Counted from the first letter of the stretch, positions 48,812-59,609 are shown. The stretch is DNA of 64,000 nt from Piromyces finnis finn (GCA_002104945.1 MCFH01000031.1:124001-188000); one strand, 5' to 3'. Notes: generated from the sequence alone by a model not told the origin. Program-made: numbers and translations.

Positions 48812-51800
48812 ATGAATACTCATTTATCTATTGATCTATTACAAAAACCAAATTTAAAACGTATAGCTTATTTTAAAGAAAAAAAGCAAGCATTAAAATG
48901 GTTATCAAATCTTCAAGGAAGAGAATTTAATGAAATAACGTGTCATCAATTTTCTGATGGAGTAGTTTTTTTACAGGTAAAAAATAAAATATTTTTAAAA
49001 TAGATAATTAAAAAAATATATTATTTTAAATATATAATTTCTCTTAATATCATTTAAATATTTTTAATATTGTATAAAACTTGAACATTCCTATTTAATC
49101 AAATTTTTATATCAAAATTTTCTTTTTTATAGTTAATTGCAACAATTAATGTAAATTTTGATTTTTCTGGATATATTCAAGAATCTCTAAGACAAGATAA
49201 CATTATAAAGTTCAACTTTGTAATTATAATTTATCAATATTATTAAAAATTTATTATCAAATGCTTTAATTAGACATATTTTAATATTAATTTTTTATGT
49301 ATATATTATTTTTTTATCTATATAATACGTATCAATGGATTGAAAACTTGATATGGGATTAAATAAAATATCATAATTATCGAAAATAATTTTGATATTA
49401 TTATTTATAAAAATACTTTACATCATTATTCCATTTACTTTTTATAATATGGCCTTATATTATAAACAAACAAACAAACATTATTTTTAAATGGAACAAA
49501 TATTTTGGTATTATTAAAATGAAATGAAAATATGTATTGATTTTTAATTATCCTCAAAAATTAAAATATAACATCAATAAATAATAATACTATAATAAAC
49601 AAAAAAAAAAAAAAAAAAAAAAATTGAATATTTATAAAAAATAAATATAAATAATTAAAGGATGGTAATATAATGTTAATAATTCAATAAGAAATGTTAA
49701 AATTATATATATATACAACTAATATCTTATTTTTTATTCTATTCAATTAGTATTGAAGAAAGAACTTGAAAAAATAAATCGTATATATCATATATAATAT
49801 TAATAACTCTCTAAATATGTATAATGATAAATATCTATATTAATTATTATTAATACTTTCATTTATTAATATCTATAATAAAGAAAATACAAATGATATA
49901 AAATTTGAGGATATAATAAATGGTAATGAGGAAGAAATCATGTATTTAATTGTTAAATTATATAAAATTTATTGTAAAAAAATGTCATATGATCGGGTAT
50001 CACAAATAGTAGATGAAGAAGGAGAAGAAGAATATGAAAATAATAACTCTAAAAATACAAATCAATATACTATAAACAATACCAATATTAATCATTTGTA
50101 TAATGAAATATATAATAATAACAACAGTAATAATCAATTAATAGAAGATAACATTAACTTCAACATTGAGGTAGTTTTTTTTTTTTTTATTATTATTTTA
50201 TTTTAATATTTTTGTGATAAAAAAGTTATGCTGGTCTGAAAATTAATATATATTTAATTTTCTCAAAAAATATAAGATTACATTATTATCAAAAATTCGA
50301 TGGTTATTTCTCTTTATTGCACAGTATGAAAATTATATAAACCATGTTATTTTTAATCAAGTTACTGAGTATTTGTATATTATAAATACTATAAATACTA
50401 ATGTATGTATATTATATATTATATTAATTATTATAAATAATTTATAATAAAATAATAATTATATTATTCGTGGTATATAATAATATATAATAATCATTTA
50501 TTAGAAAATATCAACATTAAATAAACGAATAATAAATTTATTATGTTCAGGCAATGTATATAGTTTTGCAACAGCATTATTATTGAACGATGAAAAAAAG
50601 CTTTCTAAATTCTCTAATTTAGAAGATCGATACCCTTTTTCTGATGAATTTATTGACCAATTATTAGAAAAAAAATATATTCATATGGATAGAACCATGT
50701 ATTCTTCTATTACTAGTATGATGCACGAACAAGATCCATTATGTGAGGTAAGTAATATAAATACAATATAAATTTATATTTAGAATTATAATATACTTTT
50801 ATTATATTTATTTTATGTTTAAATATTTCATTTCTAATGAATACTTTTATTTTATTTTAAATTTATGTAAAAGTCCATACATGTTGTTATACTGAATAGT
50901 CTTTTAGAAGCAAATAATTCAAGCATTACTATTAATATAATTGAAAATAAAATTGAAAATAATAAATTTTCACCGTTTGATAAAGAAGATGCTCTTTTAT
51001 TATGGGTTAATAATAAAATTGTTAATGAAAAATTGGATATTGAAGAAATTGATGATATTATTAAAGACTTTTTTACAGTTCTTTTTATTTTTCTAAATAT
51101 ATTATTTCCACAAGTTAAAATTGAATTTAATGATATCTTTAGTTCTGTTTTTAATTCTAAAATCCCAGAATTATTTAGTAAAATTGGAATTATTTATCCA
51201 TTTAGAAATAACGAATTGTCAAAACCAATACAAAGAAGTCATAAAGTAAGAAATAAATACTTATAACATTTAAATTGACAATATATAATACCAGAAACTA
51301 GTTTTTTGGTTCTAAAATATTTATTACTATTCTTTTATTGATATACATTTTTTCGTAGGATACGCTAATAAACTTTATGTGTGATGTTTTTTCATATTGT
51401 TATAATATTCGTATAGAAAAGTCATTGCCAAAAAGAGATAAATGTAATGATAACTCTAATACTAATAGTAGTAATATATATCAAACTTTTGATACAGAAA
51501 CAACAAATAATATTTATAAAAATCTATCAAAAAATGAAAATTACATTAGCAAAATTAATGAAAGAGATAGTATTAGCACCTCAAGCTCAGTAACTGTTAA
51601 AGGAAATGGTAAGTTTTATTGCTTATATACTTATTATAACATAAAATATTATTTTTTATATTTTTTGAATTAACTATATAAAATTATATATTTATTACTA
51701 TAAAAATAATAGATAAAATGAATGAATTTGACTTTGATTTAAATAATGATTCTATTAATAATATAAGTAACGAGTGTCATCCTCATTTTAGAAGTTCGTC

Positions 51801-57800: not shown

Positions 57801-59609
57801 ACCAACAATGAATAATGAAAATAGTGTTTCGATTATTGCTAATTGTATGAATATAATGTCATCTAATTCAGAAAATTATCAAAATTTAAATATTGCAATG
57901 AAAAATGTAGATAATACTCAAACTTTTAATAATAATGAAAATAAAACAGTTCCACAACCTGCTCTGATGAATAGTAATCCATCTATAATTGAAAATAATA
58001 CAATTAGTAATAGTAACATGATACATAATTTTGAAGGTAGTGATGTGATAAATACTAACACTAAAGCTCTAACAGAATCACCTCAAAAGGAAAAAGAAAG
58101 AGAATCGAAAATAAAAATTAAAAACTATAATGGAAAGTTAATATATGATATATGTAATGATAGTGATAGTAATATTAGTAATAGTGGTAGTTGCACTTCA
58201 AGTGTTCGTAAAGCTATTTCATTTTTTGTTAGCTCAGATGATAATACTAATTCAATGAATGAGTCTCATGATAAAAAATCCACTAAAGAAAGACCAGAAA
58301 GTGCCAAGGTATATAAGCTAAACTTTTATTTGTCATTTTTAGTTATATAAATAAAATAAAATTATAAAATAGATTACTAAACTTTTCTAATAATATTAAA
58401 ATTTTAATTAGCAAATAAAAAAAAAAGAAATTATTTTGAAGAGATTAGAAATGTCTAGAAAAGCAAATCAATCTCGTTCAGAAAGTAGGTTAAAATCAGC
58501 AAAGTCAACAGATTTAATTGTTACTAAGGAAAAGAATAAGGAAAAGAAAAAGTAAGACAATATTTTAATTTATAGTTAATTAAAATAATAATATTTATTA
58601 TTAATGATATATATTAAAATTATTTTTATGTGTTTTTTTATAGTTGTAATAGTAGTTGTAATGCTAAAGAAAAACAGATCCAACAACCAAATAATGAAAC
58701 TCCTATTATTAATAAAATAAATAATATTAACTCTCAATGTGGGGATACAGAGAAAATTATTTCTTCTCAAATAATAGAATATCAGCATACAGAGGAATCC
58801 AAAGAATCAACCTCTACATCTACGATATCCATTTCATCTTCTTTACAAAGTAAAACAAATTCTAATACTAAGCCATTACAACCAAGCGCACCAACTGGTA
58901 AATTTTTTTTTTGATTTCTTTATATATTTTGTTTTATTTATAGACTTTTTTTTGTATAACTATTATATATAAATATATAAATATATAAATATTTATTATT
59001 TATTTATTATTTTTTCATTCTAAAGCTAAACTAGATAGTAATCATCATATAAAATCAAATATCCATATGAGAAAGTTTAAACTTCCAAATAATAAAAATT
59101 TAATGAAAAATGCATTAAATACTATTTTAGCAGGAAAAATTAATGAAAAAGTGAGAAATGAAGCTATTAAAGTAAGATTTTTACAGCTAATTAATACAAA
59201 TAATATCATTGAATTATGTATTGTTATTATTATATTAATAATTATAATATTTTTTTTTTCATATAAATATTAAATAAACATCAATCTGAAAAAAATATAG
59301 TGTTTAGATCAATCCGATCAAAATCATTTTATTATTCTTTTTCAAAATAATGAACAACATATTTTCAGGGGTTTATATTCTTTTAATCCGGAAGAAGAAC
59401 AAAGCGTTCATAGAATATTTTCAGTAAATGGAAATAAATCAAAAGTTCTAAGTCTTCCAGAAAATATTCAACCTTCTGATGTTTATGAATATTATAAATA
59501 TGATACAGGTAGTCGTAGTTTTTATAAGGTTCATACAAAAAATTTTCAAAGGACTACACATGCTTGTGCATTAATACCAAGTTATTTCAAAAGAGGAAAT
59601 AAAAGTTAG
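48812..59609 (+). CDS. CAMSAP: CAMSAP/Patronin-like microtubule-binding protein (~2,900 aa, ~15 exons): N-terminal CH domain, CAMSAP-type CH region, very long acidic/Asn-rich linker, C-terminal CKK domain
   Basis: The C-terminal exons give PNNKNLMKNALNTILAGKINEKVRNEAIK|CLDQSDQNHFIILFQNNEQHIFRGLYSFNPEEE...YEYYKYDTGSRSFIKVHTKNFQRTTHACAL, a clear CKK domain. The N-terminal exons give SKIRWLF, INLLCSGNVYSFATALL, SIHVVILNSLLEA, EDALLLWVNNKI and DTLINFMCDVF, paralleling CAMSAP N-terminal blocks. The 52096-58350 ORF is the large internal exon (~52038-58308). Confidence 0.85.

What the first reader, a model, noticed from the sequence alone, without database searches (positions are those of the whole stretch)
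48812..59609. A fungal CAMSAP/Patronin with full CH + CKK architecture
Seen: an intact C-terminal CKK domain (N..MKNAL..ILAGKINE, HFIILF, FRGLY, YKY) and the CAMSAP N-terminal blocks lie in one phase-consistent gene. Established: CAMSAP/Patronin proteins stabilise microtubule minus ends through the CKK domain and are best known from animals; model yeasts and moulds lack them. Inference: this early-diverging fungus keeps a non-centrosomal minus-end stabiliser, possibly for rootlet, rhizoid or sporangial arrays. The linker is greatly expanded (~2,100 aa in one exon, with Glu/Asn-rich and poly-Asn tracts). The CKK carries an insertion (SVNGNKSKVLSLPENIQPSDV) where animal proteins have GxGP.
Basis: partly seen in the sequence, partly recalled or inferred. 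Interest (0 to 1): 0.75.

Follow-up and report, generated by a model that had tools for sequence, protein, structure and literature searches.

The report
Gut-fungus CAMSAP/Patronin gene, confirmed
This anaerobic gut fungus carries a real, roughly 2,950-residue relative of the animal microtubule minus-end protein CAMSAP/Patronin, but such genes are already catalogued in its swimming-spore fungal relatives, so it is a mis-annotated member of a known family, not a new kind of protein.

Summary
Window 48812-59609 (+) reads as one 14-exon GT-AG gene.

- **CKK domain:** the last two exons encode it (Pfam PF08683: 51 bits plus 16.7 bits against a cut-off of 27, covering profile positions 11-118 of 119). 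It is the only CKK locus in the 56.5-Mb genome.
- **N-terminal module:** a profile built from the N-termini of 22 chytrid CKK proteins picks the upstream exons as its six best matches among 2,893 six-frame segments, in collinear order (e4 at E 2e-15, e5 at E 1e-9).
- **Linker:** one 6,272-nt exon rich in Asn, Glu and Lys.
- **Linkage:** intron positions and phases are conserved in an orthologous metagenome contig. Intron-less contigs from relatives join the large exon's tail to the CKK exons at the predicted junctions.

The novelty is overstated. The nearest relatives are gut-fungal fragments mis-named "PRC-barrel-containing protein-like protein". Next come many Chytridiomycota proteins already annotated as CAMSAP1/2 or as CKK-domain proteins.

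The claimed 21-residue CKK "insertion" is about 6 + 4 residues in a loop that varies in length across the family.

New details are a missed exon (50277-50402), a micro-exon, and a probable extra N-terminal EB/Hook-like CH domain shared with chytrid orthologues. No RNA from this organism could be examined. Minus-end preference is untested.

The parts
48812..48976 (+). Exon 1: start codon and first helices of a probable N-terminal CH-like domain (LKWLSNLQGR...FSDGVVFLQ)
   Evidence: First ATG after an in-frame stop. The donor is CAG|GTAAAA, phase 0. It is the best match in the whole window to a profile of the chytrid N-terminal domain, but weakly (E 0.25, 9 bits). It also falls in collinear order.
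49133..49219 (+). Exon 2 (provisional): continuation of the N-terminal CH-like domain
   Evidence: Acceptor TTTTATAG| and donor TTT|GTAATT, both phase 0. There is no significant profile hit, and orthologue L003 is unclear here. This is the weakest exon of the model.
49751..49780 (+). Micro-exon (..LKKELEKIN). The in-frame alternative starts at 49759.
   Evidence: Conserved in L003 (VLKNELQRLE), with the same phase-1 donor x|GTAxAT. The acceptor at 49750/51 is phase 1 and conflicts with exon 2. The acceptor at 49758/59 is phase 0 and is in frame.
49884..50170 (+). Exon 3: last helix of the N-terminal CH-like domain (EDIINGNEEEIMYLIVKLYKIY), followed by an Asn/Glu-rich spacer
   Evidence: 44% identical to L003 774-1046. 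The phase-1 acceptor is conserved in L003. There is a weak, collinear match to the chytrid profile at positions 86-146.
50277..50402 (+). Exon 3b, found here: LLSKIRWLFLFIAQYENY..., the start of the CAMSAP N-terminal module
   Evidence: Conserved in L003 1171-1287. It matches the chytrid profile at positions 160-197 (E 0.17, collinear). Splice sites are AAG| and AAT|GTATGT, both phase 0.
50505..50747 (+). Exon 4: CAMSAP N-terminal module (LLCSGNVYSFATALLL ... MHEQDPLCE)
   Evidence: Chytrid N-terminal profile E 2.2e-15, positions 204-285. There is a weak Pfam hit to CH_CAMSAP2_N (PF25532, E 0.017). It is 67% identical to L003.
50874..51245 (+). Exon 5: main part of the CAMSAP-type CH domain (SIH..., PFDKEDALLLWVNN, IDDIIKDF...)
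   Evidence: Chytrid profile E 1.3e-9, positions 285-371, continuing exon 4 without a gap. It is 73% identical to L003. The family profile A2 hits almost only CH domains in the PDB (36 of 37; plectin at E 2.4e-5).
51359..51608 (+). Exon 6: last CH helix (TLINFMCDVFSY), then a Ser/Asn-rich stretch
   Evidence: Chytrid profile positions 454-499, E 0.07, collinear. The intron position and the phase-1 donor are conserved in L003.
51713..51880 (+). Exon 7: short conserved block (FDFD...HFRSSSSS...EIDQIFN)
   Evidence: 56% identical to L003 2541-2714. Phase 1 at both ends in both species.
52037..58308 (+). Exon 8: 6,272-nt linker exon of about 2,090 codons, rich in Asn, Glu and Lys, with poly-Asn tracts
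   Evidence: One uninterrupted ORF. The orthologous ORF P0001 (2,024 aa) is 40% identical over residues 1005-1345. Conserved blocks lie at aa 12-64, 1019-1356, 1595-1624 and 2029-2090. No Pfam family hits it. The donor AAG|GTATAT follows 'ERPESAK' in both species.
58412..58551 (+). Exon 9: basic block QIKKKEIILKRLEMSRK...
   Evidence: 71% identical to L003. The junction '..PESAK|QIKKKE' is present in the A. robustus protein ORX78077.1 and in intron-less contigs L004 and L006.
58644..58897 (+). Exon 10: Ser/Thr-rich spacer ending ..LQPSAPT
   Evidence: Phase 2 in, phase 1 out. It is collinear in L003 and contiguous in L004.
59026..59171 (+). Exon 11: N-terminal extension and first helix of the CKK domain (..NNKNLMKNALNTILAGKINEKVRNEAIK)
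   Evidence: Pfam CAMSAP_CKK profile 11-39. It is 96% identical to L003. The donor is AAA|GTAAGA. The junction is contiguous in L004 at 2824|2825.
59301..59609 (+). Exon 12: CKK core (HFIILF, FRGLY, YKYDTGSRSF), C-terminus and TAG stop
   Evidence: Pfam CAMSAP_CKK at 51 bits, profile 41-118. It matches PDB CAMSAP1/3 CKK chains, and the family profile reaches E 1.7e-20. It is 90% identical to L003.

Best explanation
Window 48812-59609 (+) is a single protein-coding gene of an anaerobic gut fungus. The assembly statistics fit Piromyces finnis. The gene encodes a protein of about 2,950 residues from the CAMSAP/Patronin family.

Anatomy (shown here):
- a probable EB/Hook-like CH domain (exons 1-3);
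- the CAMSAP-type N-terminal module with its CH domain (exons 3b-6);
- a fast-evolving low-complexity linker of about 2,100 residues with four conserved islands (exon 8);
- a basic and Ser/Thr-rich stretch (exons 9-10);
- a CKK domain at the extreme C-terminus (exons 11-12).

Mechanism (inferred from solved human and Naegleria CKK-microtubule structures): the rigid CKK domain wedges between two protofilaments at the intradimer site and so tethers the protein to microtubules. The CH module and the linker would provide partner binding and reach.

Whether it prefers minus ends, as animal CAMSAPs do, or binds the lattice, as the Naegleria CKK does, is not known. All named fungal relatives are flagellated (zoosporic) fungi. 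That makes a role at non-centrosomal or flagellum-associated microtubule arrays of zoospores plausible, but untested.
For: CKK domain:
- Pfam hits on both terminal exons, above the family cut-off.
- Single locus in the genome.
- Matches to CAMSAP1/3 and Naegleria CKK structures.

N-terminal module:
- A profile of the N-termini of chytrid proteins, which were selected only through their CKK domain, finds e4, e5, e6, e3b, e3 and e1 as its six best hits among 2,893 six-frame segments. They are collinear on the + strand.
- Per-protein hits of e4 and e5 fall in adjacent N-terminal regions of those proteins.
- Batrachochytrium protein P0033 passes Pfam CAMSAP_CH (39 bits) in the region that aligns to e5.
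- Family profile A2 hits almost only CH domains in the PDB (36 of 37).

One gene:
- GT-AG introns of 92-129 nt with consistent phases.
- The same intron positions and phases in orthologous contig L003, including e7|e8.
- A. robustus model ORX78077.1 and intron-less contigs L004-L006 join the large exon's tail to the CKK exons at the predicted junctions.
- Chytrid orthologues carry both ends in a single protein.

Vertical inheritance: the gut-fungal CKK clade (SH-aLRT 99) sits on the chytrid side of the tree, apart from the Nematostella and Cyanophora sequences.
Against: - No RNA from this organism could be examined.
- Pfam does not recognise CAMSAP_CH on the window's own exons, and CH_CAMSAP2_N scores only 15.6 bits.
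- The AlphaFold model of exon 5 alone was poor (pLDDT 64), and fold searches with it were not significant.
- Exons 1-2 have only weak support (E 0.25 to 1.5), and the exon 2 to micro-exon junction is ambiguous.
- Public gene models in relatives cover only the 3' end (258-387 aa). The transcript-like contigs found also cover only the 3' 3.2 kb.
- CC1 is not detectable.
- Non-animal CKKs can lack minus-end preference (PMC6868217).
Confidence: 0.85

Rival explanations
1. It is a CAMSAP-family gene, but its CKK binds the microtubule lattice without minus-end preference, as in Naegleria gruberi and Phytophthora infestans. The protein would then act as a general microtubule tether or bundler, not a minus-end stabiliser.
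For: PMC6868217 reports that both of those non-animal CKKs lack minus-end preference. The best PDB match of exon 11 is the Naegleria CKK. The Asn equivalent to human N1492 is conserved in both types, so it does not discriminate. The gut-fungal CKK is only about 33-40% identical to non-gut-fungal CKKs.
Against: Minus-end preference was proposed as the ancestral state (PMC6868217). The fungal CKK keeps the core motifs, and a profile of the fungal CKKs matches human CAMSAP1 at E 1.7e-20 but Naegleria only at 4.4e-10.
Confidence: 0.35
2. There are two adjacent genes: a small N-terminal CH-domain gene (exons 1-7), and a separate gene consisting of the low-complexity exon plus the CKK exons.
For: Public models in A. 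robustus and N. californiae contain only the 3' part. Transcript-like contigs were found only for the 3' part. An ATG at 52096 could start a separate ORF.
Against: The e7|e8 intron has canonical sites with the same phase (1) in two species, and the reading frame stays open and conserved upstream of that ATG. Chytrid orthologues have both modules in one protein. Truncated models are expected where gene callers meet a 6-kb low-complexity exon.
Confidence: 0.08
3. The N-terminal exons 1-2 are not part of the gene, and the real start lies further downstream, for example in or after exon 3.
For: Exon 1 matches the chytrid domain profile only at E 0.25 and exon 2 not at all. The exon 2 to micro-exon phases conflict when the orthologue-conserved acceptor is used. 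The L003 sequence upstream of the micro-exon shows frame changes.
Against: Exon 1 is the top hit of that profile in 64 kb and lies at the expected place and orientation. The micro-exon and exon 3 need an upstream exon, because their acceptors are phase 1 in both species. Chytrid orthologues start with the same LxWL...DGFVLLQ motif.
Confidence: 0.15

Closest known systems
Animal CAMSAP1-3 / Drosophila Patronin (represented here by canonical hits P0071 and P0069, and by PDB 5M54, 5LZN and 1UGJ)
   Same: C-terminal CKK domain with the HF(I/L)ILF, FR(G/A)LY and YKY motifs. N-terminal CAMSAP module followed by a CH domain. Long disordered middle region.
   Different: - The canonical proteins start directly with PF25532 (residues 8-142 in P0071) and carry CAMSAP_CC1.
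- The fungal gene has no detectable CC1.
- It probably has an extra CH domain in front, has a linker about twice as long, and has 6 + 4 extra residues in two CKK loops.
- Its own exons do not reach the Pfam thresholds for the CH families.
Chytridiomycota CAMSAP-like proteins, e.g. Batrachochytrium dendrobatidis XP_006675939.1 ('CKK domain-containing protein', 1,417 aa), Rhizophlyctis rosea KAJ3042069.1 ('CAMSAP2') and Borealophlyctis nickersoniae KAJ3299477.1
   Same: Same overall order: N-terminal CH-like domain, CAMSAP N-terminal module, CH domain, linker, CKK. They are the closest full-length relatives by CKK score (E 1e-12 to 1e-7) and by N-terminal profile. They also lack a CC1 hit.
   Different: They are 1,000-1,900 aa long against about 2,950 aa here. 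The gut-fungal CH domain lacks the DG(R/W) motif. CKK identity is only about 35-45%.
Gut-fungal public models: Anaeromyces robustus ORX78077.1 (387 aa) and Neocallimastix californiae ORY34509.1 (258 aa), both named 'PRC-barrel-containing protein-like protein'
   Same: They are orthologues. They are 83-86% identical over the CKK core (85-87% by phmmer), with identical splice junctions.
   Different: Those models hold only the 3' end of the gene and are not named as CAMSAP. The full 14-exon architecture is not annotated.
Naegleria gruberi CKK protein (PDB 6QUY, 6QVE)
   Same: A non-animal CKK with a loop insertion. Its loop4 is 34 residues longer, faces away from the microtubule and is disordered (PMC6868217).
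   Different: I could not show that the gut-fungal insertions lie in that same loop. The Naegleria domain is more distant (profile E 4.4e-10 against 1.7e-20 for human).

Membership tests
CAMSAP/Patronin family | CKK domain (Pfam PF08683) scoring above the curated cut-off of 27 bits | tested here: met
   Exon 12 scores 51 bits (profile 41-118). Exon 11 scores 16.7 bits (profile 11-39). The exons were searched separately and never joined.
CAMSAP/Patronin family | The CKK domain lies at the extreme C-terminus of a long protein | tested here: met
   The Pfam CKK match ends at residue 90 of the 102-residue last exon, and the stop codon 59607-59609 follows directly. About 2,800 codons lie upstream in the model.
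CAMSAP/Patronin family | N-terminal CH module recognised by Pfam (PF25532 CH_CAMSAP2_N, PF11971 CAMSAP_CH) at their cut-offs | tested here: not met
   Exon 4 scores 15.6 bits on PF25532 (E 0.017, cut-off 27). Exon 5 has no PF11971 hit at E <= 1. Splitting the domain over exons lowers these scores.
CAMSAP/Patronin family | N-terminal module homologous to that of proteins which also carry a CKK domain | tested here: met
   The chytrid N-terminal profile gives e4 at E 2.2e-15 and e5 at E 1.3e-9, with e6, e3b, e3 and e1 collinear. Chytrid members pass or approach the Pfam CH or CAMSAP_CH cut-offs in the aligned region. Family profile A2 hits CH domains in the PDB (E 2.4e-5).
CAMSAP/Patronin family | CH fold of the window's own CH region, shown by structure prediction | tested here: inconclusive
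   The exon 5 model has pLDDT 63.6 and pTM 0.42. Foldseek found nothing at E <= 0.001, although 16 of its 24 weak rows are CH domains. VIA gave a best Z of 4.0. The last CH helix lies in exon 6, which was not joined.
CAMSAP/Patronin family | CC1 coiled-coil / spectrin-calmodulin region (PF17095) | tested here: not met
   No Pfam family hits the 2,084-residue exon. It is also absent from the chytrid orthologues scanned, yet present in the canonical hits P0060, P0071 and P0069.
CAMSAP/Patronin family | CH and CKK parts encoded on one transcript | tested here: inconclusive
   Supported by conserved intron phases in two species, by intron-less contigs for the 3' part in relatives, and by single-protein chytrid orthologues. 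There is no RNA from this organism.
CAMSAP/Patronin family | Preferential binding and stabilisation of microtubule minus ends | not testable with these tools
   This needs TIRF or pelleting assays. Sequence does not discriminate, because the N1492 equivalent is conserved in both the preferring and the non-preferring CKKs.

The most novel reading that the evidence does not exclude
CAMSAPs of zoosporic fungi (chytrids and gut fungi) form a distinct architectural variant.

- They carry an additional EB/Hook-type CH domain ahead of the canonical CAMSAP module, and they have no CC1.
- In the gut fungi the linker is also expanded to about 2,100 residues.
- The extra CH domain could give a second contact with microtubules or with dynein adaptors.
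- All fungal relatives identified here are flagellated fungi. That would tie the protein to zoospore or flagellar-apparatus microtubule arrays.
Probability: 0.4. Interest if true: 0.55.

Novelty: new member of a known kind. Interest (0 to 1): 0.33.

Why it matters
It corrects the annotation of a gut-fungal gene. Public models in sister genera are 258-387-residue fragments named after a structural superfamily, whereas the real gene spans 10.8 kb and 14 exons.

It extends the documented range of CAMSAP/Patronin from chytrids to Neocallimastigomycota. Every fungal relative I could name is a flagellated fungus, which fits the idea that the family is kept there. Absence from other fungal groups was not tested.

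It also offers a natural test case for two questions:
- Can a CKK domain with enlarged loops still recognise minus ends?
- What does the extra N-terminal CH domain of the fungal proteins do?

It does not overturn current views. CKK was already proposed to be ancestral to eukaryotes, and chytrid homologues are already in the databases.

Tried and rejected
**RNA evidence**

**Searches that found nothing**
- Two metagenome scans for contigs encoding exon 5 or exon 4, meant to find spliced 5' transcripts.
- A word search with exon 3.
- An ESM Atlas feature search with exon 5: best score 0.87, unnamed clusters.
- phmmer of exon 5 against the PDB.
- Chunks of the large exon against the chytrid proteins: no match outside the gut fungi.
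- A PDB sequence profile search with the chytrid N-terminal domain: not significant, with Hook3 at E 0.36. The fold search settled that question instead.

**Literature**
- Atherton et al. 2017, which holds the phylogenetic survey of CKK, is not in the library. Its conclusion is cited only through PMC6868217.
- No held paper mentions Patronin together with Neocallimastigomycota.

**Ideas considered and rejected**
- That the CKK 'insertion' hides an intron (GTAAAT...CCAG, 59424-59460). It is 37 nt, which is not a multiple of three. It is conserved as coding sequence in the orthologues and is present in the intron-less contigs.
- That there is a 334-nt intron between exons 3 and 4. It contains the conserved exon 3b.

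**Step deliberately left out**
- Every search was done exon by exon, by reference.
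Full report
**Setting**

The region has 12-25% G+C. The window is part of a 56,455,805-base assembly in 232 contigs. The assembly statistics agree with what I remember of that genome, but I did not verify the name independently.

**The CKK end**

- Window 59301-59606 hits Pfam CAMSAP_CKK (PF08683) at 51 bits, E 1.9e-13, profile 41-118 of 119.
- The upstream piece hits profile 11-39 at 16.7 bits.
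- A six-frame search of the whole genome finds only these two pieces.
- Exon 12 matches CAMSAP1/CAMSAP3 CKK chains in the PDB (5M54, 5M5C, 5LZN, 1UGJ; E about 2e-3).
- A profile of 19 CKK sequences (the window's, gut-fungal, chytrid, one Cyanophora, one Nematostella) reaches E 1.7e-20 on human CAMSAP1 and 4.4e-10 on the Naegleria CKK.

**Gene model**

I read the splice sites directly from the sequence. The exons are:

| Exon | Coordinates |
|---|---|
| e1 | 48812-48976 |
| e2 | 49133-49219 |
| micro-exon | 49751 (or 49759)-49780 |
| e3 | 49884-50170 |
| e3b | 50277-50402 |
| e4 | 50505-50747 |
| e5 | 50874-51245 |
| e6 | 51359-51608 |
| e7 | 51713-51880 |
| e8 | 52037-58308 |
| e9 | 58412-58551 |
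| e10 | 58644-58897 |
| e11 | 59026-59171 |
| e12 | 59301-59606, stop 59607-59609 |

All introns are GT-AG. From e3 onward they are 92-129 nt long, and their phases match.

The one soft spot is e2 to the micro-exon.
- The acceptor that is conserved in the orthologue (49750|49751) is phase 1, whereas both possible e2 donors are phase 0.
- An AG eight bases further on (49758|49759) restores the frame.
- So either the second AG is used, which gives about 2,946 codons, or the assembly lacks one base near 49207-49219, which gives about 2,949 codons.

The spliced protein was therefore never scanned as a whole.

**Comparative support**

A word search with the conserved part of the large exon found one protein, P0001 (2,024 aa, 40% identity). 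It is a prokaryote-style ORF call on a 10.7-kb JGI metagenome contig, L003.

- tblastn of the window's exon translations shows e3 to e12 all present and collinear on L003: e4 67%, e5 73%, e11 96%, e12 90%.
- The large ORF ends just after the same 'ERPESAK' donor in both species.
- Intron positions and phases at e5|e6, e6|e7 and e7|e8 are the same in L003.
- The phase-1 ends of the micro-exon and of e3 are also the same.
- Within the large exon only four islands are conserved: aa 12-64, 1019-1356, 1595-1624 and 2029-2090. The rest is low-complexity, with 24% Asn.

**Transcript-like evidence from relatives**

- The A. robustus protein ORX78077.1 (P0004) contains the tail of the large exon, then 'QIKKKE...', then the CKK, with the junctions I predicted.
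- Two further JGI proteins of 619 and 536 aa lie on contigs of 3,239 and 1,733 bp.
- Aligned to genomic L003, the 3,239-bp contig L004 falls into five blocks that omit exactly the four predicted introns.
- Against the window, its blocks end at 58550 and 59171 and resume at 59304.
- These contigs are most simply assembled transcripts.
- They show that, in close relatives, the low-complexity exon and the CKK exons are on one spliced RNA. They also show that the CKK loop insertions are in the mature message.

No such contig was found for the 5' part.

**Who the relatives are**

phmmer of exon 12 against 1.84 billion representatives gave 76 hits. Look-ups of about 30 of them show the following.

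- The three best are gut-fungal fragments. The two that were looked up, N. californiae ORY34509.1 and A. robustus ORX78077.1, are both named 'PRC-barrel-containing protein-like protein'.
- Next come Chytridiomycota from many genera: Obelidium, Rhizophlyctis, Boothiomyces, Batrachochytrium, Synchytrium, Geranomyces, Clydaea, Kappamyces and others.
- Many of these are already named 'Calmodulin-regulated spectrin-associated protein 1/2' or 'CKK domain-containing protein'.
- Cyanophora and Nematostella sequences appear lower down the list.
- No Dikarya or Mucoromycota sequence was among those identified.

A quick tree on 98 columns groups the five gut-fungal sequences (SH-aLRT 99) on the chytrid side, away from the Nematostella and Cyanophora side. 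Resolution is limited by the short alignment.

PMC6868217 states that minus-end preference, and by implication the CKK domain itself, was proposed for the last eukaryotic common ancestor.

**The N-terminal module**

Pfam on single exons gives only a weak PF25532 hit for e4 (E 0.017) and nothing for PF11971. I therefore used the chytrid proteins, which had been selected solely through their CKK domain, as an independent bridge.

- phmmer of e4 and e5 hits adjacent N-terminal stretches in many of them. In Clydaea, for example, e4 hits 109-180 and e5 hits 183-263.
- I built a profile of the first 620 residues of 22 of them and searched it against all 2,893 stop-to-stop segments of the 64-kb window.
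- Its six best hits are e4 (2.2e-15), e5 (1.3e-9), e6 (0.07), a segment I had taken for intron (50247-50444, 0.17), e3 (1.2) and e1 (1.5).
- All six are on the + strand and in profile order.
- The segment I had taken for intron is conserved in L003 and has good phase-0 splice sites. It is exon 3b.
- The e4|e5 junction is seamless in the profile (position 285 on both sides).
- In the chytrid proteins, the region aligned to e5 is where Pfam finds CH or CAMSAP_CH: Batrachochytrium 39 bits, Boothiomyces 27.7 bits, Rhizophlyctis CH 31.8 bits.
- A profile of e5 plus 21 homologous regions hits almost only CH-domain proteins in the PDB (36 of 37): plectin at 2.4e-5, then MACF1, Vav, SPEF1, alpha-actinin, dystrophin and others.

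The AlphaFold model of e5 alone was weak (pLDDT 63.6). Fold searches with it were not significant, although CH domains dominate the weak Foldseek rows.

I conclude that the CH assignment holds at the level of the family. For this gene it holds by homology, not by a direct threshold hit.

**An extra CH domain**

- The chytrid proteins begin with a conserved domain of about 110 residues (consensus ...LLSWLAELLGRDDLTLEDLEDGFVLLQ...).
- It lies upstream of the point where PF25532 starts. In Borealophlyctis the domain occupies 13-118 and PF25532 occupies 161-267.
- Its AlphaFold model is very confident (pLDDT 96.1, pTM 0.88).
- The best structural matches are EB1/EB3 CH domains (TM 0.67-0.70, probability 1.00). 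Plastin, Hook3 and IQGAP1 CH domains follow. The Foldseek E-values are only 0.03-0.5.
- Canonical CAMSAPs in the hit list start directly with PF25532 (residues 8-142 of P0071), carry CC1 and do not match this domain.
- In the window, exon 1 (LKWLSNLQGREFNEITCHQFSDGVVFLQ) is the best hit of the domain profile in 64 kb, but only at E 0.25. Exon 3 matches the last helix weakly.

I rate the presence of this domain in the gut-fungal gene as probable, not shown.

**The CKK 'insertion'**

- HMMER aligns fungal 'NGNKSKVLSLPENI' with human 'TGT------GPKNI', and 'PEEEQSVHRI' with 'PDTEE----I'.
- So there are about 6 + 4 extra residues.
- In the family alignment the same G...P loop carries 15-24 extra residues in several Chytridiales. 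Its length also varies among the gut fungi.
- PMC6868217 describes a 34-residue disordered loop4 insertion in the Naegleria CKK that faces away from the microtubule. I could not establish that it is the same loop.

**Function**

- Shown: domain composition, gene structure and conservation.
- Inferred: microtubule binding through the CKK wedge between protofilaments, by homology to the solved complexes.
- Not inferable: minus-end preference, because tested non-animal CKKs differ.
- All named fungal relatives are flagellated fungi, and mammalian Camsaps are needed for ciliary central-pair formation (abstract of PMC8490363). Together these make a zoospore or flagellar role a reasonable hypothesis, but no more than that.

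**Verdict**

The interpretation of it as an unusual fungal retention is overstated, because chytrid CAMSAPs are already annotated.

What is new is the full gene model in Neocallimastigomycota, the very large linker, and the extra N-terminal CH domain. That domain is well supported for the chytrid orthologues and only probable for this gene.

Noticed in passing
window 60375-60872 (-) and 62743-63174: The minus-strand ORF at 60375-60872 is made of GFG/AFG repeats (..TGFGTTSTGFGNTNTTTAFGANKTGFG..). It looks like an exon of an FG-repeat nucleoporin and sits in a local G+C peak (0.35). A second repetitive ORF pair lies at 62743-63174. Pfam gave no hit for either of the other two overlapping ORFs at the first locus, 60427-60930 (+) and 60338-60859 (-), neither of which is the FG-repeat frame.
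   Followed up: partly
window 59638-59750: There is an (AAT)n microsatellite of more than 100 bases just after the stop codon, in the likely 3' UTR. Similar Asn-codon repeats occur inside the large exon at several places.
   Followed up: no
P0028:8-120 and other chytrid proteins (alignment A4): Chytrid CAMSAP-like proteins carry an N-terminal EB/Hook-like CH domain that the canonical CAMSAPs in the hit list lack. The AlphaFold model has pLDDT 96 and matches EB1 at TM 0.69.
   Followed up: partly
P0010, P0011, P0020, P0081 and P0042 (chytrid database proteins): Several chytrid gene models fuse the CAMSAP-like protein to a TatD DNase domain, and one (Kappamyces) to IFT43. These are most likely merged neighbouring genes in automatic annotation. 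That probably explains why they are named 'deoxyribonuclease tatdn3'.
   Followed up: no
L004 3-1310 versus 1289-3148: The transcript-like contig of a related gut fungus has its large-exon part split into two overlapping ORFs in different frames. Genomic L003 is one continuous ORF there. It is either an assembly error in low-complexity sequence or a real frameshift in that organism.
   Followed up: no
L003 100-300: In the orthologous contig, the sequence similar to exons 1-2 (..LSNGVDWLF....YILEIGNNIKMIF) is spread over three reading frames with stops between them. The N-terminal CH exons may be degenerate, differently spliced or mis-assembled there.
   Followed up: partly
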